IMG/VR virus record: IMGVR_UViG_3300017917_002434
Location: 186,001-250,000 of that record
DNA: 64,000 bases
Direction: 5' to 3' (one strand)
The notes under the pieces were generated by a model. It had not been told where the DNA came from. It made no database searches and saw only the letters and a program-made list of their open reading frames with translations. Of the stretch, positions 31,265-64,000 are shown piece by piece. How positions within the stretch are numbered: position 1 is the first letter of the stretch; each line of letters opens with the position of its first letter. A program made the translations under genes and the position numbers.

Positions 31265-31270
31265 TACAGC

Positions 31271-31666
31271 ATGAGTCTGATTTTTGTTAACGGTTCTTTT
31301 GATATACTTCATCCAGGACACATCGAACTGCTAAACTATGCCAAAAGTTTAGGATCTCATCTCATGGTTGCCATAGATTCGGACGCTAGAATTACTAGTT
31401 TAAAAGGACCGACTCGGCCTATTAACAATCAACGTTATAGAGCGTTCATGTTAAAAAATCTTAGAGCAGTGGACGAAGTAGTAATTTTTGATTCTGACCA
31501 AGAATTAATAAACTTGATCGCTGCCTGTGATATAATGGTAAAAGGCAGCGACTATATGGGTAAACCTATCGTAGGCGAAGAAGTCTGCGATGAAATTATA
31601 TTTTTTGATAGATTATATGACTATTCAACAACAAAAATCATTCAAGATATTGTTAATCGGAGATGA
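31271..31666 (+). CDS. hldC: D-glycero-beta-D-manno-heptose 1-phosphate adenylyltransferase (RfaE domain II)
   Basis: 'NGSFDILHPGH' (HxGH), 'DSD..I..LKG..RPIN', 'VKGSDY', 'YSTT.II'; start moved to ATG 31271. Confidence 0.85.
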   Translation: MSLIFVNGSFDILHPGHIELLNYAKSLGSHLMVAIDSDARITSLKGPTRPINNQRYRAFMLKNLRAVDEVVIFDSDQELINLIAACDIMVKGSDYMGKPIVGEEVCDEIIFFDRLYDYSTTKIIQDIVNRR

Positions 31667-32366: not shown

Positions 32367-32743
32367 CAGAAAGACTTACAGGAAAAGTAGATAAAGGATG
32401 GGGCTTTGAAATTATATGGGCTACCAACGATCACTATTGCGGAAAAATTTTAGTATTCGAAAAGGCAGGAAATAAGTTTTCTATGCACTTCCATAAAACC
32501 AAAGATGAAACTTGGTTTGTTAATTCTGGCAAATTTAAATTACGTTGGATAGATACTAAAGATGCTAAAATCTATGAACAAGAATTAAATGAAGGCGATA
32601 CTTGGCATAATCCTCCTTTACAACCTCATCAATTAGAAGCCATGACAGATGGTGCTATGGTGTTTGAAGTCAGCACAGCAGATTCTATAGAGGATAATTA
32701 TCGATTAGTACCCGGAGACAGTCAAAAGAAAGCAGAACAATGA
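32363..32743 (+). CDS. Cupin-fold sugar isomerase-like protein
   Basis: 'KGWG.E', 'SMHFH..KDETW.V..G', 'P..PH.L.A', 'EVST.D...DNYR' cupin metal motifs; translationally coupled on both sides. Confidence 0.75.
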   Translation: MTERLTGKVDKGWGFEIIWATNDHYCGKILVFEKAGNKFSMHFHKTKDETWFVNSGKFKLRWIDTKDAKIYEQELNEGDTWHNPPLQPHQLEAMTDGAMVFEVSTADSIEDNYRLVPGDSQKKAEQ

Positions 32744-33228
32744 ACATATATCTAGACATGGACGATGTTGTAGCTGATTGGTTTGGCTACGCTAGAGAGT
32801 ATCTCAATGAGCCACTGTTCAAAGATGGTGACATATTGCCCGAAGCTACTTGGCAAAAATTAAAAAATGATCAGCGTATGTATAGTAAACTTCCTGTTAA
32901 AAAGGGAGCATATGATTTAGTCAACTGGTGTAGAAATTATAGAGATACAAAAAACGCAGGACTTTATTTTCTCAGTGCTATCCCCAAAGGCAATGATATG
33001 CCCTGGGCACCTCAAGATAAAGTTTTTTGGGCACATGAATATTTTCCTGACATCCCTGTATTTTTAGGTCCATATAGTTTTGATAAGTGGGTTAGATGTT
33101 CTCCTGGAGATATCCTAATAGATGATCGTAGATCAAATTGTGAAGATTGGGAACGTGCCGGGGGCCTATCACACATATACCGCTCTTGGCCGGAATGTAA
33201 ACTTTGGTTAGAGGACATTCTAAAATGA
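32740..33228 (+). CDS. HAD-superfamily phosphatase, 5'(3')-deoxyribonucleotidase-like
   Basis: 'IYLDMDDVVADW' (DxD motif I), 'FLSA', 'K..W', 'ILIDDR..N...W..AGG'. Confidence 0.75.
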   Translation: MNIYLDMDDVVADWFGYAREYLNEPLFKDGDILPEATWQKLKNDQRMYSKLPVKKGAYDLVNWCRNYRDTKNAGLYFLSAIPKGNDMPWAPQDKVFWAHEYFPDIPVFLGPYSFDKWVRCSPGDILIDDRRSNCEDWERAGGLSHIYRSWPECKLWLEDILK

Positions 33229-34115
33229 TCATAGTAACTGGTGGTGCCGGCTTCATTGGTTCTAATATTATAAAAGGTCTAAATGATAGATCTATTTCAA
33301 ATATTATTGTTGTTGATGATATTAATCCCGATAAAGAAAAAAATCTAGAAGATTTAAAATTTTCAGATATACTTTCCCCTCAAGATTTCTACGGCATCTG
33401 GAATCACTGGCACATCGTTGATGCGGTATTTCACGAAGGTGCTATATCATCTACCACAGAAAAAGATCAAAATAAGATAGATCAGTATAATCTTCAACCC
33501 GGTTATTGGCTAGTAGAGCAGGCTGCTAGAAACAATTTTTTATTATCTTATGCTAGCTCTGCTTCAGTCTACGGTGACAGCAATACCTTTAAAGAAAAAC
33601 AGCCACTAAATCCTCAATCGCTTTATGCTACTAGTAAAATGCTGTTAGATCAATATGTCTATAGCACATTATTAGATTATCCTGATACTAGAATACAGGG
33701 TTGGAGATATTTCAACGTCTATGGAAAAAATGAAATTCACAAAAAAGATCAAGCGAGCCCGATAACGAAATTTAGTCAGCAGGCCAAAAATACAGGAAAA
33801 ATAAAAGTTTTTAAAGGCAGCGAAAATTTTCAGCGAGATTTTATCTGTGTCAGCGACATAGCCGATATTAAAATAAAATCATTAGACAAGAACTTTAATG
33901 GAATTTTTAATCTCGGTACAGGAAAAGCAATATCGTTTTTAGAAGTGGCTGAACTGATCAAAGAAAGATATTCGGCGACTATTGAAGAAGTAGAGTTTCC
34001 TCAAGAGCTTATCAATCAATACCAAAAATATACCTGTTCGGATAATACAGAATTATTGAAGGTGATAGGAAATTATGATTTTACGTCTATTAGATCTTTT
34101 CTTTCAACGACATAA
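33225..34115 (+). CDS. hldD: ADP-L-glycero-D-manno-heptose 6-epimerase
   Basis: 'MIIVTGGAGFIGSNI', 'FHEGAISSTTE', 'YASSASVYG', YxxxK (YATSK), 'RYFNVYG..E.HK', 'RDFI.V.D', 'YQKYT'; GAGGA SD before ATG 33225. Confidence 0.85.
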   Translation: MIIVTGGAGFIGSNIIKGLNDRSISNIIVVDDINPDKEKNLEDLKFSDILSPQDFYGIWNHWHIVDAVFHEGAISSTTEKDQNKIDQYNLQPGYWLVEQAARNNFLLSYASSASVYGDSNTFKEKQPLNPQSLYATSKMLLDQYVYSTLLDYPDTRIQGWRYFNVYGKNEIHKKDQASPITKFSQQAKNTGKIKVFKGSENFQRDFICVSDIADIKIKSLDKNFNGIFNLGTGKAISFLEVAELIKERYSATIEEVEFPQELINQYQKYTCSDNTELLKVIGNYDFTSIRSFLSTT

Positions 34116-38560: not shown

Positions 38561-38579
38561 AACCTTAATGGAGGATATT

Positions 38580-53550: not shown

Positions 53551-54002
53551 GTTGGTACGACAAAGTCAGTAAAGATATTTCTTATATTCCAGATGCGGCA
53601 CAATTCTATGAAAACGAATTACAGGCTGCTAAACTAGAATGTAAGATTTTTGGAAATATTGAAAAAGTATCAGCATCAATGCCGGGTATAGTCGAGAATC
53701 GTTTTAATCAACTACAAGAGATTGAAGCGATTCTCGAGTACCTTAATATCGAACTGAGACGTTTAAAAAGCCAACATTTTCGTAAGTATCTAGAAAATTA
53801 TCAGCGTAGCCTAAGTTCAAGAGACTGCGAAAAGTTTGTTGATGGTGAAGCAGATGTTGTTGATTTTGAAAAGATCATCAACGAGTTTGCCTTACTTAGA
53901 AACAAATGGTTAGGTGTTATCAAAGCACTGGATCAGAAACAGTGGCAATTGACTAACATCGTTAAATTACGTGTAGCAGGCATGGAAGACGCCTCTCTTT
54001 AA
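53547..54002 (+). CDS. uvsY: Recombination mediator protein
   Basis: About 150 aa helical protein after uvsX; 'Y...LS.RD.EK.VDGE.D', 'K.LD.K.WQL.NIVKLR.AG'; GTG start. Confidence 0.7.
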   Translation: MSWYDKVSKDISYIPDAAQFYENELQAAKLECKIFGNIEKVSASMPGIVENRFNQLQEIEAILEYLNIELRRLKSQHFRKYLENYQRSLSSRDCEKFVDGEADVVDFEKIINEFALLRNKWLGVIKALDQKQWQLTNIVKLRVAGMEDASL

Positions 54003-54634
54003 TAAGACACCATTCCCCATTTATTTTTCTTAGCACCGGCGTAATGGTCAGCGTAAGCACCAAAGGTCTTTTTTACCGGATTCCATTCTCTGGTATCTAA
54101 TCCCACATATCGCAGATTGTGATCATTAAATAATTTGTTCAATAGGCCTTGTCCTTGAAAATCATATTCATGTTCTAAATATTTGCCTACTGATTTTTTA
54201 GTCTTTTCTATGACATACTTTGGCAAATACATAAATCCAGCGTTGAAATAATATTCTCTAGGTACTCCGAGTATCGCTGCTAACCCTTCTACAGATTTTC
54301 CAGGATCGGTAACAGCGTAAAATTGATCTCCACACATTTCGAAAAGATTAGGGGCATTGTCTTTAATAATATAATCAGAATCGAAATAGATGATCTGATC
54401 ATAATTTTCAAAATCGTAGAACTTTAATTTCTGATAGTCTATGTGTTTACCTGCGGCAGGTTTATAGTCGTTAGGATCAGTGACCATATAGTAATCAGCA
54501 CCACAGCGATTAGCATATCTTCTAGCGTTACGTTCACTGATAGCATACATTTCTTGATGAAATGAATATGTTGTTAGCCTATCTGTCTGTACGTAATTGG
54601 GAATATTGATCTGAAATATAATTCTTTTAGGCAT
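53999..54634 (-). CDS. GT-A glycosyltransferase (GT8-like)
   Basis: 'YDQIIYFDSD' DxD, 'YFNAGFM', 'Q..LN', 'HYAG..K'. Confidence 0.7.
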   Translation of the reverse strand: MPKRIIFQINIPNYVQTDRLTTYSFHQEMYAISERNARRYANRCGADYYMVTDPNDYKPAAGKHIDYQKLKFYDFENYDQIIYFDSDYIIKDNAPNLFEMCGDQFYAVTDPGKSVEGLAAILGVPREYYFNAGFMYLPKYVIEKTKKSVGKYLEHEYDFQGQGLLNKLFNDHNLRYVGLDTREWNPVKKTFGAYADHYAGAKKNKWGMVSY

Positions 54635-54655
54635 CTTAAATCCGTTTTAAAACGT

Positions 54656-54673
54656 TATTTAGTTAGATAAATA
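54656..54673. promoter_or_regulatory. Divergent late promoter pair
   Basis: TATTTA 54656-54661 (minus) and TAAATA 54668-54673 (plus). Confidence 0.65.
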
Positions 54674-54694
54674 CTCAGTTAATTAGAGGTTAGA

Positions 54695-55342
54695 ATGAAG
54701 AGTCTAAGAGATAAAATTTCAGATCCGCGATATGATAACGAATTTAGTCAAGTGTTGTTATCTGCCGAGCACCATTTTTATAATTTACATAAAGCTCATA
54801 ACGGAAATTGGCATATGGGGTGGGGAGCATATCTATTCGATGGACGTACCTACGAATACTGTATAGATATGTACGACAAACAAAAGTTATTATATGAAGT
54901 AGCAAAAAATAACAAGTCAGTCCTTGAGATAGGAACGTATGTCGGTCATTCATTATTATTAATGCTTCTTGCTAATCCAAAATTAAGAGCTACTTGTATT
55001 GATATCTCAGATGAGTTCGCTGGTCCGTCTGTCGAATATTTAAGAAAATCTTTTCCTGAAGCAGATATTGAATTCATTCATAAATCTAGTTTAGACGCTC
55101 TTCCTCTGATAGACAAAAAATACGATATGTTCCATATCGATGGCACACATAAAAATAAAATTATTACCATAGAGTTTCATCAGTGTATAGAAAAAAGAAG
55201 TTCAAATATTGTTGATGTTGTTTTTGACGATATATATTCTTGTCAAAAATTATTAGATCAAATCAAAGAAAATATGAATGTATTGGAATCGTCAATTCCC
55301 GGATGTACATTTTCAAACGGATATTTTAAGTTAAAGGTATAA
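54695..55342 (+). CDS. Class I SAM-dependent methyltransferase (Methyltransf_24-like)
   Basis: 'VLEIGTYVGHS', 'CID', 'YDMFHIDGTH', 'VFDD'. Confidence 0.8.
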   Translation: MKSLRDKISDPRYDNEFSQVLLSAEHHFYNLHKAHNGNWHMGWGAYLFDGRTYEYCIDMYDKQKLLYEVAKNNKSVLEIGTYVGHSLLLMLLANPKLRATCIDISDEFAGPSVEYLRKSFPEADIEFIHKSSLDALPLIDKKYDMFHIDGTHKNKIITIEFHQCIEKRSSNIVDVVFDDIYSCQKLLDQIKENMNVLESSIPGCTFSNGYFKLKV

Positions 55343-55345
55343 AGT

Positions 55346-56245
55346 ATGAAATCTTTAGTTACAGGCGGAGCTGGATTCATTGGCTCACACATAGTCGATA
55401 GATTAATTCAATTAGGACACGAAGTAGTCGTAATTGACAACGAAACATCGCAGGTTCATGATAATTTTTATTATAACGATAAGGCACAGTATCATAAGCT
55501 CGATATCGTAGATTACGAGAATACAAGAAAATTATACGAAGATGTAGATTATGTTTTTCATTGTGCGGCAGAATCTCGTATACAACCTACAATTTTAAAT
55601 CCACTAGGTGCCATTAAAACCAATACACTAGGAACAGGAACTGTGCTACAGTGTGCTAGAGAAGCCGGCGTGAAGAAAGTTATGTACAGTTCTACATCAT
55701 CTGGATACGGATTAAAAAATGAACCTCCATTAAGAGAAGACATGCCAGATGATTGTCTTAATCCTTATTCTGTATCAAAAGTGTCTGGCGAAAAACTTTG
55801 TTCGATGTATACTCGATTATTTGGTGTTAAAACAGTGATTTTTAGATACTTTAATGTCTACGGACCGAGAGAGCCCTTGAGAGGTCCTTATGCTCCTGTT
55901 GTTGGTCTTTTTATTAGACAGCATCGAGCAGGAGAAGCATTGACTATCGTTCCTGATGGAACACAGCGTAGGGACTTTACACATGTAGATGATGTTGTAG
56001 AAGCTAATATACTAGCCATGTCTAAAGACGACCACGATCATTACGGCGAAGTTTTTAATGTAGGTACAGGAACGAATCATTCTGTATTAGAACTAGCGGC
56101 TATGATATCAGAAAATACAAAAATGATCGAACCTAGGCTAGGCGAAGCATATATCACTTTAGCAGACAATTCAAAATTGCGAAATGTGTTTGGATGGAAA
56201 CCTACAAAAGATTTAGAAAGTTATGTCAAAGAACTGAAAAAATGA
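55346..56245 (+). CDS. NAD-dependent nucleotide-sugar epimerase/dehydratase (GalE-like)
   Basis: 'VTGGAGFIGSH', 'YSSTSS.YG', 'NPYSVSK', 'RYFNVYGP', 'RDFTHV.DVV.AN'. Confidence 0.9.
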   Translation: MKSLVTGGAGFIGSHIVDRLIQLGHEVVVIDNETSQVHDNFYYNDKAQYHKLDIVDYENTRKLYEDVDYVFHCAAESRIQPTILNPLGAIKTNTLGTGTVLQCAREAGVKKVMYSSTSSGYGLKNEPPLREDMPDDCLNPYSVSKVSGEKLCSMYTRLFGVKTVIFRYFNVYGPREPLRGPYAPVVGLFIRQHRAGEALTIVPDGTQRRDFTHVDDVVEANILAMSKDDHDHYGEVFNVGTGTNHSVLELAAMISENTKMIEPRLGEAYITLADNSKLRNVFGWKPTKDLESYVKELKK

Positions 56246-56823
56246 AGAAAAACAAATATGTGATCGACGAAGCAGCACCACATTTAGGCGGAAATTTGCT
56301 CTTCGGTGATGCTAATACATGGGCACCATTGGCCTGGGAATATATTTTAGAAAATTTTGATATAAAGTCCATGACAGATCTTGGATCAGGATTAGGACAC
56401 GCTGCTAAATGGTTTACAGACAAATCTATTGTTGTAACAGCAGTCGATGGGCTGTCTTACAATGTAGACAATGCCATATTACCAACAGTGCTTCATGATT
56501 TAACTGTTGGTCCATATACTAACGCAGTTGATCTAGTTTACTGTGTAGAAGTAGTAGAACACATAGAAGAAAAATATTTAGATAATCTGTTAACTTCATT
56601 AACTCAAGGTTCGTATCTTTTTATGACACATGCTGTGCCCGGTCAAGATGGATATCACCATGTTAATTGTAGAGACAGTGATTATTGGATCAATCACTTG
56701 CTAGACAGAAATTTTATATTACTAGATGAAGCTTCGGAAAAAATTAGATCTCTAGCAGCAGAAAATAATGCTATACATATTTCAAGAAACGGAATGATTT
56801 TTAAAAAATTATTGTCTGTGTAA
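56242..56823 (+). CDS. Class I SAM-dependent methyltransferase
   Basis: 'DLGSGLG', 'AVDG', 'DLVYCVEVVEHIEE', 'PGQ.G.HHVN'; start moved to ATG 56242 (ATGA coupling). Confidence 0.75.
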   Translation: MKKNKYVIDEAAPHLGGNLLFGDANTWAPLAWEYILENFDIKSMTDLGSGLGHAAKWFTDKSIVVTAVDGLSYNVDNAILPTVLHDLTVGPYTNAVDLVYCVEVVEHIEEKYLDNLLTSLTQGSYLFMTHAVPGQDGYHHVNCRDSDYWINHLLDRNFILLDEASEKIRSLAAENNAIHISRNGMIFKKLLSV

Positions 56824-57579
56824 TTTATTAATTTCTTTTACAGACTCTAGTAATCTCTGAGGCGTACCTATATCGAGTCCGTGTTCTACGATAGCAGCGA
56901 CGTCTTTAGGAAAACAAGCACCGCCATAACCAAACTGTCCGTCGGGGCCCGGGACATCCCAATGACTATTTCCTAGTCTAGTATCATTTTTAGCTATCTC
57001 TTTTATTTCTTTCCAGTCTACTCCTACGGCCTTAGCTAGATGAAACAGATCGTTCATAAACGTAACCTTAGTTGCCATAAAAGCATTAGCCATATATTTG
57101 AAAAGACTGGCCGAGGCAATGTCTGTGATATGATAGTGTTTGGCCTGTATCGTGCTAGATGAAATTATTTGTTTTGCTCTCTCGCAAAATCGAGGATTGC
57201 CACCTATCAACACCCATGTTGATGTTTCGTAATCTTCGGTAGCATTAGCCGCTGTAAGAAATTCGGGAGCATGTACTAGGTTTGGATATTGATCTTGTAA
57301 TCTTAGATATACCCCTGGAGGAACTGTGCTTTTACATATAATAACACCGTCGTATCCTTCTAATTCTTTTAACACAGATTTTACATACGAATCATCACAA
57401 TGCCCATCTTCCAACATTGGCGTTGGTACGCAGATGTATACAGCATCGCAACTTTTAATATCTTTTATAGTTGCTGATTGATCTCCCAATTTAGGATCTC
57501 TAGCAATAAAATGTTGATATCTGTGAGTATGGGCCACAGCTGAACCTACATACCCTAATCCAAAAATTCCTATTTTCAT
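56809..57579 (-). CDS. ugd: UDP-glucose/GDP-mannose 6-dehydrogenase, short form lacking the C-terminal domain
   Basis: 'GLGYVG', 'ICVPTP', 'KSTVPPG', 'PEFL', 'KY.AN.F.A.KV.F.N', catalytic 'GYGGACFPKD'. Confidence 0.85.
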   Translation of the reverse strand: MKIGIFGLGYVGSAVAHTHRYQHFIARDPKLGDQSATIKDIKSCDAVYICVPTPMLEDGHCDDSYVKSVLKELEGYDGVIICKSTVPPGVYLRLQDQYPNLVHAPEFLTAANATEDYETSTWVLIGGNPRFCERAKQIISSSTIQAKHYHITDIASASLFKYMANAFMATKVTFMNDLFHLAKAVGVDWKEIKEIAKNDTRLGNSHWDVPGPDGQFGYGGACFPKDVAAIVEHGLDIGTPQRLLESVKEINKLHRQ

Positions 57580-57601
57580 CAAGTCCTCTCTAACCACAGT
57601 T

Positions 57602-57631
57602 TATTTAGTGGGTATATTATTCAAATAAATA
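57602..57631. promoter_or_regulatory. Divergent late promoter pair
   Basis: TATTTA 57602-57607 (minus) and TAAATA 57626-57631 (plus, 5 nt before ATG 57637). Confidence 0.65.
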
Positions 57632-57636
57632 GAAAC

Positions 57637-58404
57637 ATGAAAATTGTTTTAGTTACTGGTGGGTTTGATCCGATTCATTCCGGACACATAAGTTATTTTA
57701 AGTCGGCACGTACCTTAGGCGATATGCTCATAGTCGGATTAAATTCTGATGATTGGTTAGAGCGTAAAAAAGGTCGTGCGTTTATGCCGTGGAATGAAAG
57801 ATTGTGTATTATCAATAATCTTTCAATGGTAGACGAAGTTTACACATTCGATGACGAAGATGGTTCTGCTAAACATTTTATTCAGCAGGTCCGAGCTCAT
57901 TACCCTGATGCTGAATTGATATTTGCCAACGGCGGCGATCGCACAGCAAAAAATATTCCCGAAATGGATGTTCAAGATTCTAATCTACGTTTCGAATTCG
58001 GTGTCGGCGGAGAAGATAAAAAGAACTCTAGCAGCTGGATCTTACAAGAGTGGAAGGCTCCAAAAACAGAAAGACCCTGGGGATATTATAGGGTATTACA
58101 CGAAGTTACTGGATGTAAAGTAAAAGAGCTAACAGTGAATCCTGGACAGAGTCTAAGTCTACAAAGACATAAAGATAGAACAGAAATATGGTTAGTAGCC
58201 AAAGGTCAATGTATGGTAGAACATTATGGTCATGCTATACAATCTGATGCGTATCTTGTTCAAACCCCCTTACATACTCACAGCGAATATCATGTCAGTA
58301 GAACTGCCTGGCATAGATTGTTTAATCCATATAACGAACCTTGTCAGATAGTTGAAATTCAATACGGCGATCGCTGTGTTGAGGAGGACATAGAAAGAAA
58401 ATGA
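57637..58404 (+). CDS. HxGH nucleotidyltransferase (TagD/RfaE-II-like) fused to a mannose-6-phosphate-isomerase-like cupin
   Basis: 'TGGFDPIHSGH', 'GLNSD.WL.RKKG..FM', 'FANGGDR', 'K.NSSS'; then 'RPWG.Y.VL', 'V.PGQSLSLQRH..R.E.W', 'EIQYG..C.E.DIER'. Confidence 0.85.
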   Translation: MKIVLVTGGFDPIHSGHISYFKSARTLGDMLIVGLNSDDWLERKKGRAFMPWNERLCIINNLSMVDEVYTFDDEDGSAKHFIQQVRAHYPDAELIFANGGDRTAKNIPEMDVQDSNLRFEFGVGGEDKKNSSSWILQEWKAPKTERPWGYYRVLHEVTGCKVKELTVNPGQSLSLQRHKDRTEIWLVAKGQCMVEHYGHAIQSDAYLVQTPLHTHSEYHVSRTAWHRLFNPYNEPCQIVEIQYGDRCVEEDIERK

Positions 58405-59096
58405 AAGATATAATACCTATCTTTGTAGGTTACGATCCTAGAGAAGCGATCGCATATCATACCTGTGTAAACAGTATTATTAGAAATTCCAGCCGCCCTG
58501 TAAGCATTATTCCCGTGGCACTTAATCTGTTCAAAGACTATACTGAAACACATACCGATGGCAGCAATCACTTTATCTATACCAGATTTCTTGTGCCATA
58601 TCTGATGAGCTGGACTGGTCATGCTATATTCATTGACGGTGATATGATCGTTAGAGGAGACATAGCAGAGCTTTGGGACCTACGTGAAATGGGCAAGGAT
58701 GTTCAAGTTGTAAAGCACGATTACAAAACAAAAATGCCTGTAAAATATTTAGGAGCAAAAAATGAAGACTATCCTAGAAAAAATTGGTCTAGTGTTATTC
58801 TGTGGAATTGTAATAGTTTTCCTAACCGGAAACTTACTCCCGAGTTCGTCCAGCGAGCCACAGGTGCCGAGCTCCACCGCTTCTCGTGGCTAGAAGAAGA
58901 CCGCATCGGAGAATTACCTAAGGAGTGGAACTGGCTAGACGTAGAATACGATTACAACCCCGACGCTAAATTAGTTCACTATACTTTAGGCACACCGTGT
59001 TTCCATGAATTTGCCACACAGGGAAATTTTGCTAATGAATGGCATAGAGAGCGAGTATTAACTGAACACTGCCAACAACATGATATTCTTAAGTAA
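58401..59096 (+). CDS. GT-A glycosyltransferase (GT8-related)
   Basis: 'IFVGYDPRE', 'F.YTRFLVPYL', 'FIDGDM', 'YPRKNWSS..LWNC', 'HYT.G.P'. Confidence 0.75.
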   Translation: MKDIIPIFVGYDPREAIAYHTCVNSIIRNSSRPVSIIPVALNLFKDYTETHTDGSNHFIYTRFLVPYLMSWTGHAIFIDGDMIVRGDIAELWDLREMGKDVQVVKHDYKTKMPVKYLGAKNEDYPRKNWSSVILWNCNSFPNRKLTPEFVQRATGAELHRFSWLEEDRIGELPKEWNWLDVEYDYNPDAKLVHYTLGTPCFHEFATQGNFANEWHRERVLTEHCQQHDILK

Positions 59097-59865
59097 GAAC
59101 GGTCAAGACGAATACATCAATCAATTCTGTAGAGCATCTAAAGGAACTCTAGTTAACACAGACAATTTTGATTATAATAGTAGTAACGAACCTATCGTAT
59201 TGAGAGGTATTCTCAAAGACAAGATAATGAAAAACTGTTGGAGGGATCAACGTGATTTTTATTACGTAGATACTGGTTATTTTGGAAATGAGAAAACTAA
59301 ATCTAATCCTAATGGTTGGAAACTATGGCATAGGATAGTCAAAAATAATCTACAACACGGAGAAATTATTCCTAGACCAGCAGATAGATTTCTTCGATTT
59401 AATAAAAAATTTCAACCGTGGAAAAAGACCGGAACTAAAATTCTCATAGCTGCTCCTGATGAAAAACCTTGTAAATTCTACGGTATCGATAAAGAGCAGT
59501 GGGTTAACGAAACCGTTAACACAATCAAACAATTTACAGATCGGCCTGTGGTAGTAAGAGAACGAGCTAAATTAAGAATTGATAGGATTAGCACCGACAC
59601 TTTAGAGCAGGCATTGAATAATGATGTATTTGCATTAGTTACATTTAACAGTGTCGCTGCTGTTGAGAGTATTTTTCACGGTATACCAGTTTTTACACTA
59701 GCACCGTGTAATGCTGCTAGTCCAGTAAGTTTACAGGACCTCAGCCATATAGAAAAACCGTATTACCCGGACAGCGATAAATTATTTGCGTGGGGCTGTC
59801 ATCTGGCCTACGGACAATTTAGTTTTACCGAAATGAGAGACGGATCAGTTTGGAACATTATATGA
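59080..59865 (+). CDS. Putative glycosyltransferase, capsule-synthesis (KpsC/KpsS)-like C-terminus
   Basis: 'Y.DTGYF', 'TDRP.VVR', 'LVTFNS.AA.ES..HGIPVF'; paralogous to 60520..61449. Confidence 0.5.
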   Translation: MIFLSKNGQDEYINQFCRASKGTLVNTDNFDYNSSNEPIVLRGILKDKIMKNCWRDQRDFYYVDTGYFGNEKTKSNPNGWKLWHRIVKNNLQHGEIIPRPADRFLRFNKKFQPWKKTGTKILIAAPDEKPCKFYGIDKEQWVNETVNTIKQFTDRPVVVRERAKLRIDRISTDTLEQALNNDVFALVTFNSVAAVESIFHGIPVFTLAPCNAASPVSLQDLSHIEKPYYPDSDKLFAWGCHLAYGQFSFTEMRDGSVWNII

Positions 59866-60533
59866 ATCTACACTTTATAACAAGCATATCAAAAGATTAT
59901 TGGTTTAATACAGCTAAAAAATGTATTAGTACATGGGACTTACCAGGAAAAGTTACAATATTTGTTGAACAACGAGAAGGCGATATGAGTTGGACTTCTG
60001 AATTACCGTTTCCTTTTCAATTAGTTTATGCCCCCGATCTTAAAGTAGATAGATTTACAACAACTAGCAAAATTGCTAAATTTTGGGGTAAATCATGTGC
60101 CCAGATACAGGCTGTTAGAGAACGCGGAACCGATGAAAGAGTTATATGGATCGACGCCGACGTGGAACAAATAGCTCCGGTAACAGCAGATCTTTTTAAT
60201 TTTGAATTTGTAGAACCTCTAGCCATGTTAAACAGCGGCGATCATGAAGATTGTTGGGAAACCGGTGTTGTTATCTTTAATCAACAGTTCGATAAACTGA
60301 ATTTAATCATGAAACGATACGAAAGTGCTTGGAATAACGAAGAGATTTTATGTAGTCTGTGGAAACCATATGATGCTCAGGTGTTGGGGTACATTGCCGA
60401 GGATCGCGGATATAAAAATCTCTGTAAACAGCCTTGCTCAAATGCCGATGCCTTAAAAAACAGTCATCTCGCAGATTATTTTACTCACTGGATCAATAAA
60501 GAAAACAAAGCAAAACTAAATGAACAAGATTAA
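59862..60533 (+). CDS. Putative GT-A glycosyltransferase
   Basis: 'KF..K..AQ', 'VIWIDAD', 'ETG...FN', 'YDAQV'; related to the ORF at 63339. Confidence 0.55.
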   Translation: MNLHFITSISKDYWFNTAKKCISTWDLPGKVTIFVEQREGDMSWTSELPFPFQLVYAPDLKVDRFTTTSKIAKFWGKSCAQIQAVRERGTDERVIWIDADVEQIAPVTADLFNFEFVEPLAMLNSGDHEDCWETGVVIFNQQFDKLNLIMKRYESAWNNEEILCSLWKPYDAQVLGYIAEDRGYKNLCKQPCSNADALKNSHLADYFTHWINKENKAKLNEQD

Positions 60534-61449
60534 GGTTGTTGGTTATCTTTCAGGAATTCCGCCAGGCGTTAAAAATCAACACAAACGCGATATCATCTTA
60601 CGATTTATAGAAGGCGTTCAGAAATCTGGTGACGACGGAGTTCTAAACAACAATAGAACAATCATTCCGGCCGACATTGCTTTTATCCAAGGTTGGGTAC
60701 ACGAAGGTAGCGGCGATTCTCCTCATCTGATGGTTAGAAAACAAGTAGTCCAACATCAAAAAATTTCAAGAAAACACACGTTAGTAGTAGACAGTAATTT
60801 GTTTAATTATGTTGACGGAAATCAAAATAAATCTTATCTAAGATATAGTTTCGACGGAGTTTTTCCCACTACCGCAAATTATTTTTGGGACAACGTCGAT
60901 CCTTCTAGGTGGATACAGATCAGCAGAGATCAAAATATATCTCTTAAAGACTGGAGAACCAAAGGCAATCATATTTTAATCTGTACCCAGAGACCAGGCG
61001 GTTGGAGCATGAAAGGATTAGATGTTAATCAATGGTTAAACATGACTATAGGTGAGCTAAAGAAATACACAGACCGACCTATCGTTGTTAGATCACATCC
61101 AGGTGCTAAGGGATCTAAGGAAAGTGTGTCAGTAAACAATCGTCAAGGATTGTATACTGTTAGCAATAATCAGTTTATACGAGATGATTTTAAAAATGCC
61201 CATGCTGTAATAACTTACAACAGTTCTCCAGGGGTAGCTGCGGCTATTGAAGGAATACCGGTATTTGTTACCGATCCTAATCCTCGAATTAGTCAAGCCT
61301 ACGAAGTAAGCAATCATAGATTAGAGTTAATAGAATCACCTAACACACCAGATCGACAAGCATGGGTTGAGAAACTATCTATGAGTCACTGGAATTTAGA
61401 AGAAGCTAGATCAGGTCAGGCCTGGAATCACATCAAGCAGTACATTTAG
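60520..61449 (+). CDS. Putative glycosyltransferase, capsule-synthesis (KpsC/KpsS)-like
   Basis: 'ILICTQ', 'TDRPIVVRSHP', 'VITYNSSPGV.AAIEGIPVF'. Confidence 0.55.
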   Translation: MNKIKVVGYLSGIPPGVKNQHKRDIILRFIEGVQKSGDDGVLNNNRTIIPADIAFIQGWVHEGSGDSPHLMVRKQVVQHQKISRKHTLVVDSNLFNYVDGNQNKSYLRYSFDGVFPTTANYFWDNVDPSRWIQISRDQNISLKDWRTKGNHILICTQRPGGWSMKGLDVNQWLNMTIGELKKYTDRPIVVRSHPGAKGSKESVSVNNRQGLYTVSNNQFIRDDFKNAHAVITYNSSPGVAAAIEGIPVFVTDPNPRISQAYEVSNHRLELIESPNTPDRQAWVEKLSMSHWNLEEARSGQAWNHIKQYI

Positions 61450-61984
61450 ATAGCCAATAAACAGCTACCTTACTTTTACTGCTTTTTCTATATGATGTTT
61501 TTATAAAAGTACCCCAGGTGTCTAATACTTCTTGATGAGACCAATCATCTTTAACGTGAACTTCGAAGGGATTTCCTTCGACAGCATCTTGAGGATAGTG
61601 AACTACCGGAATACTGATTATAACTGTCTTACTGATGTTGAGCAGATGGTCAACAACCTCTAGAGCTTCGTCTTTAGTCATATGCTCTAACACATCTCCA
61701 GCTATAGCAACGTCAATATTTCGAAAAGATTTCCAATCAATTTTTCTAACATCTTCATTTATTACTTTAGAATACTTTGATCTAAGATTAAATTTTTCTA
61801 TATATGGTTTCCATGCTTCGATAGCGATCCATTCGACATTTTTAGCTATGCCGGCATCAGTAATCAATCGATAATACGTACCACTGCCGGCTCCGATATC
61901 TAGTATCCGACTGATATTGTTTTGATTTTCTTTAAACCAAAACAGAATCTGATCTTTGCCTGCCGAGTTGCTACTTCCGCTCAT
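61433..61984 (-). CDS. Class I SAM-dependent methyltransferase
   Basis: 'ILDIGAGSGTY', 'AIEAW', 'GDVLEHM'. Confidence 0.8.
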   Translation of the reverse strand: MSGSSNSAGKDQILFWFKENQNNISRILDIGAGSGTYYRLITDAGIAKNVEWIAIEAWKPYIEKFNLRSKYSKVINEDVRKIDWKSFRNIDVAIAGDVLEHMTKDEALEVVDHLLNISKTVIISIPVVHYPQDAVEGNPFEVHVKDDWSHQEVLDTWGTFIKTSYRKSSKSKVAVYWLSKCTA

Positions 61985-62669
61985 CTTTGTTCCATATATG
62001 TGTTCGTATCAATGAAGATTTGCCGCCTGTAGGGTCTCTATCCTCAGCTTTTCCCATCATGTAACTATGTATTTGTATTTTTATCAAATGTTGATTAATA
62101 GCATTATCAGCCGGCATATATGTATGCTTATATTCATCGATTAAAATTTTAGCAGCATGAGGTTTTATAAGATATCCAGCATTACCGGGCATCGATGATT
62201 GGTAGTATGGGGCTGCTTCGGGCTCGCCCTGGGGATCTAACAAATATTGCCAATATTTTCTCATCTTTTTTTCGTGACTAGAAGCCACAGATAGTACATC
62301 ATCCCACTCAACCGGAATAAATCTTCGAATTATTCTTGCGTCGTCCTCCCATACAAATATAGGTTCGTTTATTTCATGACATTTTTGCCATAATCTGTAA
62401 TGACTGGAAAAACAACCTATTTCTCCGGGAGTATTGTGCTCAGGTCTATCTCGATACTCATCAGAAAATATAGTCGATGGACCGTATTTCATGCCCCAGG
62501 GGTGATATTTCTTGCCTTCTTTAATAAATCTTTCTTTAGTTTCGTCACCGTAGGACCCTTCGAACAATTCAACCGGCATATTAAAATTTTCCAGCTGGGA
62601 TTTTAGTGTAAGTGCTGAATCTAAACTACTTTTTATTTTAGAAAGATGGATAATGTAAGATTTATACAT
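61971..62669 (-). CDS. Glycosyltransferase family 25
   Basis: 'YIIHL', 'GEIGCFSSHYRLW', 'EDDA', 'GYLIKP.AA..L', 'PAD'. Confidence 0.8.
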   Translation of the reverse strand: MYKSYIIHLSKIKSSLDSALTLKSQLENFNMPVELFEGSYGDETKERFIKEGKKYHPWGMKYGPSTIFSDEYRDRPEHNTPGEIGCFSSHYRLWQKCHEINEPIFVWEDDARIIRRFIPVEWDDVLSVASSHEKKMRKYWQYLLDPQGEPEAAPYYQSSMPGNAGYLIKPHAAKILIDEYKHTYMPADNAINQHLIKIQIHSYMMGKAEDRDPTGGKSSLIRTHIWNKDERK

Positions 62670-63342
62670 TGGAAAACTTCTCTAAATTTTTAGTAAGACT
62701 AAATTTTCTAAGATTTTTCATGTTAAAAAATTTATGTAATCTTACGACAGGCACATTTGTGATTTTTATGTCAATTATCGCAGTACCTATATGTTTATCT
62801 GTAGGTAGTGCTCCACGTTCGTGAGCAAAATTTATTAATTTTTTAGCACCAACAGGTTTTATCAAATATCCATATGCTCCTCTGAGGTATCCGCCTGCTT
62901 TATCGAAATCGTTTGGAACTACATCTTGGCATTTTATAGGAATAGTCAAACTTTTTTCAACTTTTTCATTGTAATCTTCGCTAAACTGATCATAAGGATC
63001 TAAATTTAGTACCTCTGTGAAATGTTGTTCAATATCCTCTGGTAATTTTCTTATAAAAATTCCGTCGTGTTCTAAAATCAAAAATGTTTCCTCTTGTTCT
63101 GAGCATTTTTTCCATAATTCATAGTGGCTTAGGAAGCATCCCTTAACCCCGGGCAACTTTTCTATCTTATCTTGTAGAAAATTTTTGATACCGTACTGAT
63201 CAAATTTATATTGATCCTTTATGCCATCGCTGCCTATCCAGCCTCTGAGGTCTATACCGAACTTTTCTGCCTCTGCTACTGCTTCCTGAGCAAATTTTAC
63301 GCTCATCTCAATCTGATTTTGAAAAATTACAAAGCACTTCAT
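62662..63342 (-). CDS. Glycosyltransferase family 25
   Basis: 'GVKGCFLSHYELW', 'ILEHDG', 'GAYGYLIKP.GAKKL', 'PTD'. Confidence 0.8.
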   Translation of the reverse strand: MKCFVIFQNQIEMSVKFAQEAVAEAEKFGIDLRGWIGSDGIKDQYKFDQYGIKNFLQDKIEKLPGVKGCFLSHYELWKKCSEQEETFLILEHDGIFIRKLPEDIEQHFTEVLNLDPYDQFSEDYNEKVEKSLTIPIKCQDVVPNDFDKAGGYLRGAYGYLIKPVGAKKLINFAHERGALPTDKHIGTAIIDIKITNVPVVRLHKFFNMKNLRKFSLTKNLEKFSNV

Positions 63343-63998
63343 TGCCAGTATGACTCTTTCCTCACCACTCTGAGATCTTTTTTCAAACTTTTACCTTTGT
63401 CCTTACGCTCACCTTTGAGATGATCTAGATATGCTCCCCATTCACAATTAATCAGCGGGTGTCCTTCACCTCTTATTAGTCCTTTGCTCCAATTTAACTG
63501 TTTCAAAAATGGAAATCTTTTACGGACTTCGTCGAATACATAACTGTCGTGCCACTCTTCTAATAAAAATATACCTGTCTCGGCACGATCGTACATGCGT
63601 TTAAATTCTCTGATAAAATTTTTGGTCATTTCTGAACGTAGATTTAGAGAATATAAACCACATTCGGAAAATTTGTTGTCTCTACCTAAATAGCAAAGGT
63701 CCATGTCCATAGGAATTAGATCTCTGATTTTGTCCATCGTGATAGGACTGTGACAAACCATGTCGGCATCCATCCATATTAATACATCAGCATCGCAATT
63801 TTCGGCACAATGAAAAATACTGTAAACTTTATGAGCAAATCTTACCGCATCCCACTTGAAAGGCTTGTGGCTGTCTTTTCTGTGGGCTAATCTTGGTATA
63901 CCTGATATGTCTCCGTTGGCATGAGGAACACCTTTCCATTTGTCTTTGAATGATTTTAAATCAGGAACACCAGTGTCTAAGTCTGTTAGAGTTATCCT
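63339..63998 (-). CDS. Putative GT-A glycosyltransferase, 5' end outside window
   Basis: Frame open to the window edge (...FKWDAVRFAHKVYSIFHC...VLIWMDAD...ECG...EWHDSYVF...HLKG.RK). Confidence 0.65.
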   Translation of the reverse strand, partial: RITLTDLDTGVPDLKSFKDKWKGVPHANGDISGIPRLAHRKDSHKPFKWDAVRFAHKVYSIFHCAENCDADVLIWMDADMVCHSPITMDKIRDLIPMDMDLCYLGRDNKFSECGLYSLNLRSEMTKNFIREFKRMYDRAETGIFLLEEWHDSYVFDEVRKRFPFLKQLNWSKGLIRGEGHPLINCEWGAYLDHLKGERKDKGKSLKKDLRVVRKESYWQ

Positions 63999-64000
63999 TG

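What the first reader, a model, noticed from the sequence alone, without database searches (positions are those of the whole stretch)
53999..64000. Late-promoter-driven glycan island of at least 13 genes suggests virion glycosylation
Seen: about 8 GT-like ORFs (GT8-like x2, GT25 x2, KpsC/S-like x2, two WxDAD GT-A), 3 methyltransferases, an epimerase, a dehydrogenase and a nucleotidyltransferase-cupin, in mixed orientation, with divergent TAAATA pairs at 54656/54668 and 57602/57626. No flippase, polymerase or membrane initiating transferase is visible. Inference: soluble enzymes expressed late, building a methylated, uronic-acid-containing glycan on cytoplasmic substrates (capsid/fibres or DNA) rather than exported polysaccharide.
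Basis: partly seen in the sequence, partly recalled or inferred. Interest (0 to 1): 0.6.

Follow-up and report, generated by a model that had tools for sequence, protein, structure and literature searches.

The report
Jumbo-phage late-motif glycan gene island
A freshwater jumbo phage carries a 10-kb block of 14 sugar-handling genes, eight of them glycosyltransferases, behind the same promoter motif as its head and tail genes; five of these genes are kept in every relative examined, but what gets glycosylated (virion, DNA or host lipid) is still unproven.

Summary
Window 53999-64154 (the last gene runs 154 nt past the window) encodes 14 soluble enzymes. They are eight glycosyltransferases (GT8 x2, GT25 x2, KpsC-like GT-B x2, retaining GT-A 'WxDAD' x2), three methyltransferases, a GalE-like SDR, a nucleotidyltransferase-cupin fusion and a UGDH-like dehydrogenase.

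All five transcription units start behind TAAATA. This is the most enriched upstream hexamer in the genome. It also precedes the sheath, tube, terminase and head operons, and the phage encodes a gp55-type late sigma factor. No sigma-70 consensus promoter lies in the island.

The host genome is an uncultured freshwater jumbo phage (IMG/VR, 270 kb, about 76% complete) related to RaK2/Atu_ph07-like phages. In 40 relatives the island sits between uvsX-uvsY and a helicase. Five genes are invariant: NT-cupin, GT8, two KpsC-like and one GT-A. The rest, including all three methyltransferases, varies down to strain level.

Two corrections. The 'dehydrogenase' lacks the UDP-binding domain, so uronic acid is not established. 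Lack of TM segments does not exclude lipid-linked acceptors.

No hydroxymethyl- or hydroxy-pyrimidine pathway was found, which weakens the DNA reading. A separate ADP-heptose operon with an early-type promoter lies at 31272-34115.

Virion glycosylation is the best guess (about 0.4), not shown.

The parts
53999..54634 (-). GT8-family glycosyltransferase (GT8a), a single-gene unit; accessory (2 of 40 relatives)
   Evidence: Pfam PF01501 E 2.4e-8, 34.3 bits against a cut-off of 24.3, DxD 'FDSDY'; distribution in relatives
54656..54661 (-). Late-type motif (CTAAATA variant) 22 nt upstream of the GT8a ATG
   Evidence: Sequence read; genome-wide enrichment
54668..54673 (+). Late-type motif (GATAAATA) 22 nt upstream of the MT1 ATG; heads the unit MT1-SDR-MT2
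54695..55342 (+). SAM methyltransferase MT1 (Methyltransf_24 / O-methyltransferase-like); accessory (0 of 40 relatives)
   Evidence: Pfam PF13578 3e-11, PF01596 4e-8. In run X3 the window's form is a contig of about 39x, against a diverged form of about 395x
55346..56245 (+). GalE-like short-chain NDP-sugar 4-epimerase/decarboxylase-type SDR
   Evidence: Pfam Epimerase 5e-62. Best PDB matches are short GalE (4zrm, 2e-51), UDP-GlcA 4-epimerase (6zl6) and UXS. A close ortholog (72-82% identity) was seen in 6 loci (L003-L005, L008, L018, L063)
56242..56823 (+). SAM methyltransferase MT2 (the ORF opens at 56194; the likely start is ATG 56242, in an ATGA overlap with the SDR stop); a strain-variable cassette
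   Evidence: Pfam Methyltransf_11/23; sequence. In run X3 a joint 56231>56804 at about 369x skips it, and the window's form is about 37x; present in 1 of 40 relatives
56809..57579 (-). Short UGDH-like dehydrogenase (256 aa): Rossmann domain plus central domain with catalytic Cys, no UDP-binding C-terminal domain
   Evidence: It belongs to a large subfamily of 250-300 aa proteins (587 representatives at E<1e-30). Some homologs are fused to Epimerase, CTP_transf_like or NTP_transferase. Present in 8 of 40 relatives
57602..57607 (-). Late-type motif (CTAAATA variant) upstream of the short UGDH gene
57626..57631 (+). Late-type motif (AATAAATA) 11 nt before the NT-cupin ATG; heads the core operon
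   Evidence: conserved at 11 or 14 nt in 53 of 57 distinct relatives against a background of 0.03 per 90 nt
57637..58404 (+). Fusion of a HIGH-motif nucleotidyltransferase (RfaE-domain-II-like) with a PMI-type cupin; invariant core gene
   Evidence: Pfam PF01467 1e-12 and PF01050 1.5e-19; TIGR02199 1e-20; phrog_7878 9e-30; 40 of 40 relatives
58401..59096 (+). GT8-family glycosyltransferase (GT8b); invariant core gene
   Evidence: Pfam PF01501 1.6e-8, DxD 'IDGDM'; 40 of 40 relatives
59080..59865 (+). KpsC-like GT-B glycosyltransferase, 261 aa; invariant core gene
   Evidence: Paralog of 60520-61449 (E 7e-21); 40 of 40 relatives
59862..60533 (+). GT-A 'IWIDADV' glycosyltransferase (223 aa from ATG 59862); accessory (11 of 40 relatives)
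   Evidence: hhalign 97.9% / E 3e-13 to the 271-aa GT-A family; ESM Atlas leads point to Nucleotid_trans/GT8 clusters
60520..61449 (+). KpsC-like GT-B glycosyltransferase, 309 aa; invariant core gene
   Evidence: AF2 pLDDT 90. Foldseek and VIA top hits are KpsC, KrkA and WbbB. 3849 homolog clusters, none with a Pfam domain; 40 of 40 relatives
61433..61984 (-). SAM methyltransferase MT3; accessory (1 of 40 relatives)
   Evidence: Pfam Methyltransf_23/25/11
61971..62669 (-). GT25-family glycosyltransferase (GT25a); accessory (14 of 40 relatives)
   Evidence: Pfam PF01755 2.6e-19
62662..63342 (-). GT25-family glycosyltransferase (GT25b), paralog of GT25a; accessory
   Evidence: Pfam PF01755 1.1e-14; paralogy E 2e-16
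63339..64000 (-). Retaining-type GT-A 'IWMDADM', 271 aa; invariant core gene. It continues to 64154 beyond the window; its late-type motif (CCAATAAATATG) is at 64171-64176
   Evidence: AF2 pLDDT 94; Foldseek hits to LARGE1, glycogenin, alpha3GalT and XXYLT1 at E about 1e-7; 3451 homolog clusters; sequence
31237..34115 (+). Related locus outside the finding: an ADP-L-glycero-D-manno-heptose pathway operon (RfaE-II, RfaE-I kinase, cupin, HAD phosphatase, HldD) behind a perfect sigma-70 consensus TTGACA-16-TATAAT
   Evidence: NCBIfam TIGR02199 5e-35, TIGR02198 4e-46, TIGR02197 5.5e-80; Pfam cupin and NT5C; promoter

Best explanation
The island is a phage-encoded, cytoplasmic glycan assembly line that belongs to the phage's late (gp55-type) regulon.

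**Core.** A five-enzyme core is kept in every relative examined. It consists of one sugar-activating enzyme (RfaE-II-like nucleotidyltransferase fused to a PMI-like cupin) and four transferases (GT8, two KpsC-like GT-B, one retaining GT-A). I infer that this core builds a short conserved oligosaccharide, probably with LPS-inner-core-type sugars (Kdo and/or heptose) plus hexoses.

**Accessory enzymes.** A strain-variable set decorates the oligosaccharide: two GT25, a second GT8, a second GT-A, three methyltransferases, and an SDR with a short dehydrogenase.

**Acceptor.** The most likely acceptor is a phage-specified, conserved one made at the same time, namely virion proteins (capsid, tail or fibres). 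The released particle would then carry a variable sugar coat.

**Shown versus inferred.** Shown: gene families and folds, solubility, the promoter motif and its regulon, the core/accessory structure, and strain-level variation. Inferred: late timing, the sugars used, and the acceptor.
For: - Families and folds.
- No TM segments, no PGT, flippase or polymerase.
- Late regulon: TAAATA/ATAAATA is enriched 10x/21x upstream of genes. It precedes sheath, tube, terminase and virion protein genes and the head operon containing the gp23-like MCP. A gp55-like late sigma factor is present.
- All five island units carry the motif. In relatives the motif is at a fixed 11 or 14 nt before the NT-cupin gene in 53 of 57 loci, against 1 of 38, 0 of 55, 0 of 43 and 0 of 42 for the flanking uvsX, uvsY, unk399 and helicase genes.
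- No sigma-70 consensus site lies in the island, while 11 perfect ones stand mostly just upstream of genes elsewhere, among them the MazG-like ORF, the dNMP kinase, the primase-like gene and the heptose operon.
- Core 40 of 40, accessory genes 0-25 of 40. Relatives add GT11, hexapeptide acetyltransferase, DegT, FkbM-type methyltransferases and DUF273.
- Methyltransferase cassettes differ within one lake population.
- No ThyA-family, TET/JBP, C5-MTase or TGT/DpdA gene in 270 kb. No ThyA-family gene in 5 relatives and no TET/JBP gene in 11 relatives.
- Precedents for virus-encoded virion glycosylation with a conserved core and variable, methylated decorations: chloroviruses (PMC7826918, PMC9614988) and mycobacteriophages (as cited in PMC12619734).
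Against: - No direct evidence of any glycosylated virion protein.
- No RNA data, so timing rests on motif analogy with T4.
- The island lies in the recombination/replication module (uvsX-uvsY ... helicase), not inside the structural module.
- GT8, GT25, KpsC-like and RfaE-like families are typical of LPS/LOS/capsule-linker synthesis on lipid acceptors by TM-less enzymes.
- Phage DNA can carry Kdo and heptose added by GT-B enzymes working with a CTP_transf enzyme (bioRxiv 10.1101/2023.12.21.572611), and such modification can be late (PMC13326640).
- S/T-rich tracts in the fibre-like giant proteins are not discriminating, and there are no collagen-like repeats for the GT25 enzymes.
- The genome record is only about 76% complete.
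Confidence: 0.4

Rival explanations
1. Host envelope glycolipid remodelling. The enzymes act at the cytoplasmic face of the inner membrane on lipid A-core, or on a lyso-phosphatidylglycerol/Kdo linker. This changes the host's LPS/LOS core or makes a phage-specified glycolipid, for example to mask receptors on infected cells and debris.
For: - The family repertoire is that of LPS-core/LOS/capsule-linker synthesis: GT8 (WaaI/J type), GT25 (LOS galactosyltransferase type), KpsC/WbbB-like fold, and an RfaE-II-like nucleotidyltransferase.
- The phage also encodes a full ADP-heptose pathway.
- Such bacterial enzymes lack TM helices, so one search does not exclude them (established knowledge of Waa and KpsC/S enzymes).
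- GT-rich 'cell wall synthesis and modification' clusters of large T4-like cyanophages are usually read this way (PMC12801897).
Against: - Only the late-type motif drives the island, and no early promoter is present. Surface remodelling that starts with the late genes has little time to reach the outer membrane, and it has no known benefit in a lytic phage.
- No flippase, ligase or exporter is encoded in the island.
- The five-gene core is conserved at 45-80% identity across a very diverse lineage. This fits a phage-borne acceptor better, although the conserved lipid A-Kdo inner core could also explain it.
Confidence: 0.2
2. DNA hypermodification. The transferases glycosylate phage DNA bases shortly before packaging, and the variable decorations are an arms race with modification-dependent restriction.
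For: - The island sits in the recombination/replication module next to uvsX. In T4, by my own recollection and not checked here, beta-gt also neighbours uvsX.
- Phage clusters with a CTP_transf enzyme plus a GT-B add heptose, and others add Kdo, to 5hmC.
- Hypermodification is often late.
- The genome has a gp1-like dNMP kinase and a small MazG-like pyrophosphatase.
- Strain-level variability is what restriction arms races produce.
Against: - No enzyme was found that would supply a hydroxylated base. No ThyA-family homolog in this 270-kb record (76% complete) or in 5 relatives (23-83%). No TET/JBP in this record or 11 relatives. No C5-cytosine methyltransferase and no TGT/DpdA in this record. 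Only ThyX is present.
- The GT-B pair resembles KpsC/WbbB, not T4 beta-GT-like DNA transferases.
- Half of the transferases are GT-A/GT8/GT25.
- Eight transferases is more than any DNA glycan described in the papers read here (up to trisaccharides).
Confidence: 0.2
3. Mixed or other product. The module makes a soluble or secreted glycoconjugate, or glycosylates a non-virion phage or host protein, or different sub-operons serve different targets.
For: - The island is a mosaic of five units in both orientations with differing conservation.
- The heptose operon has a different (early-type) promoter class.
- Many family members are uncharacterised.
Against: - All units share one motif class.
- The core operon is co-linear and invariant in 40 of 40 relatives, which argues for one pathway.
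Confidence: 0.1

Closest known systems
GT-rich 'cell wall synthesis and modification'/LPS-like gene clusters of large T4-like cyanophages (P-SSM2, S-SCSM1, S-SCSM2R; PMC12801897)
   Same: Large aquatic T4-type myoviruses with many soluble GTs (GT25, GT11, GT2), NDP-sugar epimerases and a TagD-type cytidylyltransferase; S-SCSM2R even encodes KdsA/KdsB. The target is unknown.
   Different: - Here a defined five-gene core (NT-cupin, GT8, two KpsC-like, GT-A) is fixed at one locus between uvsX-uvsY and a helicase in a freshwater jumbo-phage lineage.
- It is headed by a conserved late-type motif.
- Little direct sequence similarity to cultured phages: megablast finds nothing and tblastn finds only distant hits.
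Pelagibacter phage Mosig EXVC030M mini-island (MT647606.1, 124.8-130.7 kb)
   Same: It holds distant homologs of both the KpsC-like protein (28%) and the 271-aa GT-A (36%), next to two annotated GTs and two methyltransferases.
   Different: - Smaller, on one strand, with a sulfotransferase.
- No NT-cupin, UGDH-like, SDR or GT25 gene is annotated there.
- A 141-kb phage of another family.
- Function also unknown.
Chlorovirus (PBCV-1) capsid glycosylation and Mimivirus fibril glycosylation machinery (PMC7826918, PMC9614988)
   Same: Virus-encoded soluble GTs and sugar methyltransferases build a conserved core glycan with variable decorations on virion proteins, independently of host membrane machinery (plus my own knowledge).
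   Different: - These are eukaryotic viruses with unrelated enzymes and glycan chemistry, and their acceptors have been shown experimentally.
- Here nothing is shown at the protein level.
Mycobacteriophage virion glycosylation (Freeman et al. 2023, as cited in PMC12619734)
   Same: Phage-encoded GTs modify capsid and tail-tube subunits.
   Different: - Gram-positive-type hosts, one to a few GTs, siphoviruses.
- No KpsC-like, GT25 or heptose components.
- The paper itself could not be read here.
Phage DNA glycan hypermodification clusters (T4 alpha/beta-gt; RB69/DLP3 arabinosyl-5hoC; MT/5mYOX-GT clusters)
   Same: Multi-GT clusters with sugar-activation genes, LPS-like GT ancestry, heptose and Kdo as appended sugars, and strain variability.
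   Different: The defining base-hydroxylating or hydroxymethylating enzyme was tested for and not found. The GT folds differ from beta-GT-like DNA GTs.
KpsC/KpsS (GT107) and WbbB (GT99) retaining beta-Kdo transferases
   Same: Best structural match for the two GT-B paralogs (Z 12.2-13.4 over 234-254 residues). A pair of paralogs recalls the two GT107 modules of KpsC (plus my own knowledge).
   Different: - No sequence-level match (no Pfam or PDB-HMM hit), about 12% identity.
- Catalytic residues were not mapped.
- The C-terminal half also resembles ADP-heptose transferase WaaC (Z 10.2), so the donor is open.

Membership tests
T4-type late (gp55-dependent) regulon | TATAAATA-like -10 element directly upstream of the transcription unit, without a -35 box | tested here: met
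   Three units have NATAAATA (54668, 57626, 64171) and two have the CTAAATA variant (54656, 57602). No sigma-70 consensus in the island.
T4-type late (gp55-dependent) regulon | Phage encodes a gp55-type late sigma factor | tested here: met
   Genome 152761-153615: T4 gp55 match E 1.8e-6; phrog_12791 'sigma factor for late transcription' E 3.9e-80.
T4-type late (gp55-dependent) regulon | The same motif drives virion structural genes | tested here: met
   Sheath, tube x2, terminase, virion protein and fibre-like genes; head operon with gp23-like MCP.
T4-type late (gp55-dependent) regulon | Transcripts appear late in infection and start at the motif | not testable with these tools
   No RNA run holds the sequence; the phage is uncultured.
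GT107/GT99 retaining beta-Kdo transferases (KpsC/KpsS/WbbB) | Modified GT-B fold closest to KpsC/WbbB | tested here: met
   The top four representatives in a Foldseek-free search of 48,161 chains are all Kdo transferases (Z 13.4-12.2); the next fold class scores 10.3.
GT107/GT99 retaining beta-Kdo transferases (KpsC/KpsS/WbbB) | Sequence-family membership (Capsule_synth-type profile or PDB homology) | tested here: not met
   No Pfam hit even at E<=5. phmmer and the profile search against PDB find no KpsC.
GT107/GT99 retaining beta-Kdo transferases (KpsC/KpsS/WbbB) | Catalytic Asp nucleophile and CMP-binding motifs in place; CMP-Kdo as donor | not tested
   The family consensus shows a 'GHPGD' stretch, of which only P194 is listed as nearly invariant, together with D91. 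These were not mapped onto KpsC residues. No KdsB-like CMP-Kdo synthetase is encoded, so the donor would have to come from the host.
UDP-glucose/GDP-mannose 6-dehydrogenase | NAD-binding domain plus central domain with catalytic Cys | tested here: met
   PF03721 2e-17, PF00984 1e-22; GLGYVG and GGACFPKD motifs.
UDP-glucose/GDP-mannose 6-dehydrogenase | C-terminal UDP/GDP-sugar-binding domain (PF03720) | tested here: not met
   The protein ends at profile position about 296 of 413. No PF03720 anywhere in the 270 kb. The short form is conserved in relatives and is a large subfamily. It is therefore not a canonical UGDH.
Phage DNA glycosylation gene clusters | Enzyme that makes the hydroxylated base (ThyA homolog, or MT + 5mYOX/TET) | tested here: not met
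   PF00303 absent in this record and in 5 relatives. PF12851 absent in this record and in 11 relatives. PF00145 absent in this record. All records are incomplete (23-83%).
Exported polysaccharide loci (Wzx/Wzy, ABC or synthase type) | Initiating phosphoglycosyl transferase, flippase/ABC transporter, polymerase | tested here: not met
   No such Pfam families and no TM-like segment in any island protein.
Virus-encoded virion glycosylation systems | Glycan demonstrably attached to virion proteins | not testable with these tools
   Needs glycoproteomics of particles. Only regulon membership and precedents support it.

The most novel reading that the evidence does not exclude
An abundant, uncultured lineage of freshwater jumbo phages uses a conserved late-regulon five-enzyme machine, including a KpsC-like pair and an RfaE-like/cupin fusion, to put an LPS-inner-core-like (Kdo/heptose-containing) oligosaccharide on its own virion proteins. 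Strain-variable outer decorations (methyl groups, GT25 sugars, amino sugars) are then added. This would be the first virion-glycosylation system described for T4-type or jumbo phages of Gram-negative hosts. It would also involve a new short dehydrogenase class that works without a UDP-binding domain.
Probability: 0.3. Interest if true: 0.75.

Novelty: new variant of a known kind. Interest (0 to 1): 0.6.

Why it matters
GT-rich islands in large aquatic phages are common but functionally unassigned, and they are usually filed as 'host LPS genes'. This case turns that into a testable system.
- There is a fixed five-gene core found in thousands of metagenomic protein clusters.
- It has a conserved late-type promoter and a clear split between core and decoration genes.
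- Methyltransferase cassettes vary within a single lake population.

If the target is the virion, phage particles in freshwater carry a variable sugar coat. That would bear on adsorption, grazing, aggregation and stability. If the target is DNA, it would be a hypermodification pathway without any known base-activating enzyme.

Either way, three enzyme groups are uncharacterised and abundant: the KpsC-like pair, the NT-cupin fusion and the short UGDH-like dehydrogenases.

Tried and rejected
- **Phage collection, DNA level.** Megablast of the island and its left flank found nothing. Only protein-level searches worked.
- **Unnamed ORFs.** Pfam, PHROGs and NCBIfam gave nothing for the four unnamed ORFs at normal thresholds, and only sub-threshold hints at E<=5. 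phmmer and profile searches against PDB gave only noise. ESM Atlas gave leads only and holds no structures.
- **Broken-gene idea for the dehydrogenase.** Rejected. The short form is conserved at 66-71% in relatives and forms a large subfamily.
- **A C-terminal domain encoded elsewhere.** Rejected.
- **The 151-aa ORF at 53547 as an island-encoded acceptor.** Rejected; it is UvsY-like.
- **Collagen-like repeats as GT25 acceptors.** None found. S/T-rich tracts occur in fibre-like giants but are not discriminating.
- **RNA evidence.** No RNA runs hold the sequence. Contigs cannot show transcript starts.
- **Whole-contig search of metagenome relatives.** The 356-kb contig was therefore not searched beyond the fetched flanks.
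- **Literature and tool limits.** The Freeman et al. 2023 paper is not held. A BFVD fold search was not accepted. Literature searches for KpsC-like proteins in phages and for late-promoter GT genes in cyanophages gave nothing useful.

Full report
**Context**

The window is bases 186001-250000 of a single 269,730-bp IMG/VR virus record. The record is linear and CheckV rates it 76% complete. GC is about 39%.

Its RecA-like UvsX (52229-53308) is 62-69% identical to those of Sinorhizobium phage Phosso, Vibrio phage 2.275.O, Agrobacterium phage Atu_ph07 and the CBB/GAP32 group. This places it among RaK2/Atu_ph07-like jumbo myoviruses.

Near-identical DNA occurs in pond, lake, river, lagoon and aquaculture metagenomes from at least 10 studies. 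No RNA run holds it. No cultured phage matches at the DNA level.

**What is in the region**

From 53999 to 64154 there are 14 genes in five transcription units.

*Families confirmed by Pfam:*
- Two GT8 genes and two GT25 genes.
- Three class-I SAM methyltransferases. None hits a DNA-methylase family.
- A GalE-like SDR.
- A fusion of a HIGH-motif nucleotidyltransferase with a PMI-type cupin. The nucleotidyltransferase is closest to the heptose-1-phosphate adenylyltransferase domain of HldE.

*The four ORFs without Pfam names, resolved by structure or profile:*
- 59080-59865 and 60520-61449 are paralogs. A confident model of the latter (pLDDT 90) is closest to the Kdo transferases KpsC, KrkA and WbbB. 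This holds in Foldseek, in a re-alignment of Foldseek's hits, and in a Foldseek-independent scan of 48,161 chains (Z 13.4-12.2; next class 10.3).
- The 271-aa protein at 63339-64154 (pLDDT 94) is a retaining-type GT-A like LARGE1, glycogenin and alpha3GalT.
- The 223-aa protein at 59862-60533 is its distant homolog, with the DAD motifs aligned.

*Other points:*
- The 'dehydrogenase' starts at ATG 57579 (MKIGIFGLGYVG...). It keeps the catalytic-cysteine motif but ends where the UDP-binding domain of UDP-glucose dehydrogenases should begin. No such domain is encoded anywhere in the record.
- None of the 14 proteins has a TM-like segment.
- The ORF just left of the island (53547-54002) is UvsY-like. 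The island is therefore an insertion between uvsX-uvsY and a conserved 399-aa gene plus helicase.

**The promoter claim**

A fifth heads the last unit at 64171.

*Genome-wide evidence:*
- TAAATA is the most enriched hexamer in the 60 nt upstream of genes (48 of 144 copies, 10x). ATAAATA is enriched 21x.
- Genes behind it include tail sheath, two tube proteins, large terminase, a virion structural protein and fibre-like proteins. The operon containing the gp23-like major capsid protein is also behind it.
- The phage encodes a gp55-type late sigma factor.

*Evidence from relatives:*
- The NT-cupin gene, which heads the core operon, has TAAATA at a fixed 11 or 14 nt from its ATG in 53 of 57 distinct loci. 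Background is 0.03 per 90 nt.
- The flanking uvsX, uvsY, 399-aa and helicase genes have it in 1/38, 0/55, 0/43 and 0/42 loci.

*Contrast with early-type promoters:*
- Sigma-70-like sites in the island are at chance level.
- The genome has 11 perfect TTGACA-N16-18-TATAAT sites, mostly just upstream of genes. Among them are a MazG-like ORF, the dNMP kinase and a primase-like gene. None lies in the island.

'Driven by a T4-late-type promoter' is therefore well supported as a sequence statement. Actual timing is unmeasured. Two caveats apply. Two of the five units carry the weaker CTAAATA variant. Six further TAAATA hexamers in the region are intragenic.

**Relatives and variability**

The KpsC-like and 271-aa GT-A proteins each have about 3,500-3,800 homolog clusters (at 90% identity) in metagenomes. 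These are typically 57-80% identical and carry no Pfam annotation. They lie on contigs of up to 356 kb. IMG/VR alone gave more than 550 loci.

In 40 loci spanning uvsX to the 399-aa gene:
- Island length ranges from 6.9 to 15.3 kb.
- Five glycan genes are present in all 40: NT-cupin, GT8b, both KpsC-like genes and the 271-aa GT-A.
- The others are patchy: short dehydrogenase 8, GT25 14, second GT-A 11, GT8a 2, MT1 0, MT2 1, MT3 1.
- A close SDR ortholog (72-82% identity) was seen in only 6 of all the loci compared.

Other relatives carry different accessories. These include GT11, a hexapeptide acetyltransferase, a DegT aminotransferase, a second SDR, DUF273, FkbM-type methyltransferases and a pyruvyl-transferase-like protein.

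Within one freshwater run, contig depths differ sharply. A form lacking MT2 (joint 56231>56804) is at about 369x, and a diverged MT1 version is at about 395x. The window's own forms are at about 37-39x. These are contig depths only, but they indicate strain-level cassette polymorphism.

**Pathway logic**

The short dehydrogenase is not a remnant.
- It is conserved in relatives.
- The best 150 of 12,184 library matches are nearly all 250-300 aa.
- Some homologs are fused to an SDR epimerase, to a CTP_transf_like domain or to an NTP_transferase.

I infer that it works on nucleotide sugars together with exactly its neighbours here. Its substrate, and hence 'uronic acid', remains open.

Elsewhere in the window (31272-34115) the phage encodes a whole ADP-L-glycero-D-manno-heptose pathway: kinase, adenylyltransferase, HldD epimerase, a HAD phosphatase and a cupin that could replace GmhA. 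This operon sits behind a perfect sigma-70 consensus promoter. Only 3 of 11 relatives' fragments have the kinase, so it is accessory.

Taken together, the KpsC-like fold, the WaaC-like C-terminal half (Z 10.2) and the RfaE-like fusion suggest that the conserved glycan uses LPS-inner-core-type donors (CMP-Kdo and/or ADP-heptose) plus hexoses. This is inference.

**What is the target?**

*DNA.*
- I found no ThyA-family enzyme in this record or in five relatives.
- I found no TET/JBP enzyme in this record or in eleven relatives.
- I found no C5-methyltransferase or TGT/DpdA in this record. Only ThyX, a MazG-like protein and a gp1-like dNMP kinase are present.
- All records are fragments, so this is strong but not final.
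- The DNA reading cannot be dismissed. Published phage clusters append heptose and Kdo to 5hmC using a cytidylyltransferase-like enzyme plus a GT-B, and hypermodification is often late.

*Host lipid.*
- The family repertoire is that of LPS/LOS/capsule-linker synthesis, whose enzymes also lack TM helices.
- Against it: only the late-type motif is present, there is no export or ligation function, and a late-onset surface change has no obvious use for a lytic phage.

*Virion proteins.*
- This fits the regulon, the invariant core (a phage-borne acceptor) and the precedents in chloroviruses, mimiviruses and mycobacteriophages.
- Nothing here shows a glycosylated protein.

I rate the options as virion 0.4, host glycolipid 0.2, DNA 0.2, other 0.1, with the rest unassigned.

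**Comparison with known systems and novelty**

Multi-GT clusters of unknown target are known in large T4-like cyanophages. A small analogous cluster with distant homologs of two core genes exists in Pelagibacter phage Mosig.

What is new here:
- A defined, invariant core at a fixed locus in a very abundant freshwater jumbo-phage lineage.
- A conserved late-type promoter.
- A KpsC-like pair.
- A clear core/decoration split with within-population variation.

I class it as a new variant of a known kind. It is of moderate to high interest because it makes the long-standing question of what phage 'LPS genes' are for directly testable.

**Limits**

- The genome is incomplete and uncultured.
- Timing, donor sugars and acceptor are all inferred.
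- Fold similarity does not fix donor specificity.
- Contig depths are not strain frequencies.

Noticed in passing
window 31237-34115 (+): A complete ADP-L-glycero-D-manno-heptose pathway set: RfaE-II, RfaE-I kinase, cupin, HAD/NT5C-like phosphatase and HldD. It lies directly after a 2693-aa fibre-like ORF and behind a perfect sigma-70 consensus (TTGACA-16-TATAAT), with the ATG 6 nt after the -10 box. Its promoter class is early-type, unlike the GT island. The kinase is present in only 3 of 11 relatives' fragments.
   Followed up: partly
window 56809-57579 (-) and homologs P0242-P0391: The short UGDH-like proteins (250-300 aa, no UDP-binding domain) form a large uncharacterised subfamily (587 representatives at E<1e-30). 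Some are fused to an SDR epimerase (P0347), a CTP_transf_like domain (P0299) or an NTP_transferase (P0322). One (P0289) carries LAGLIDADG and weaker intein-splicing domain hits.
   Followed up: partly
window 57620-57639 and the equivalent sites in L011, L012, L016, L044, L065, L071, L084: The ATAAATA motif before the NT-cupin gene is often flanked by a short dyad (e.g. GCAGATAAATATCTGC). It stands only 5-8 nt before the ATG with no Shine-Dalgarno sequence. This suggests leaderless or near-leaderless late mRNAs, or a regulatory hairpin/operator.
   Followed up: no
window 54539-55374 and 56189-56928, run X3: Within one freshwater sample the two methyltransferase cassettes of the window are carried by contigs of about 37-39x, while flanks and alternative forms are at about 370-420x. 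A lagoon relative (X10) lacks GT8a and MT1 altogether (joint 54046>55346).
   Followed up: partly
L001 8785-10874 (genome 257785-259874, about 7.6 kb right of the island): A carbamoyltransferase N-domain protein (NodU/CmcH/TobZ family, 308 aa) and a radical-SAM protein with an N-terminal SPASM domain (388 aa) sit between a primase-like gene and a DnaB-like helicase. They could decorate a sugar or a base.
   Followed up: no
genome 104393-104554, 109817-110398; window 38568-39239: A small MazG-like pyrophosphatase with a perfect sigma-70 consensus site about 20 nt upstream of the match, ThyX, and a gp1-like dNMP kinase that has both a sigma-70 consensus and a TAAATA motif. This is a nucleotide-metabolism set without any ThyA-type hydroxymethylase.
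   Followed up: partly
window 2060-7702 and 7745-13744 (+): Two giant ORFs (1880 and 1999 aa), each with seven CBM_5_12 carbohydrate-binding modules. The second has the late-type motif. They are likely fibre or adhesin proteins that bind chitin-like or other glycans.
   Followed up: no
L001 13555-14733 (genome 262555-263733): An NTP_transf_2 nucleotidyltransferase-like ORF and a 144-aa ORF matching the malonyl-CoA decarboxylase C-terminal domain. The latter has a TAAATA motif upstream.
   Followed up: no
L003 9090-10004; L009 1-114: Relatives carry further accessories near the island. One is a polysaccharide pyruvyl-transferase-like protein, sub-threshold (22.1 bits against a cut-off of 25.3, E 1.6e-4). 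Another is a sulfate-transporter-family gene at the locus edge.
   Followed up: no
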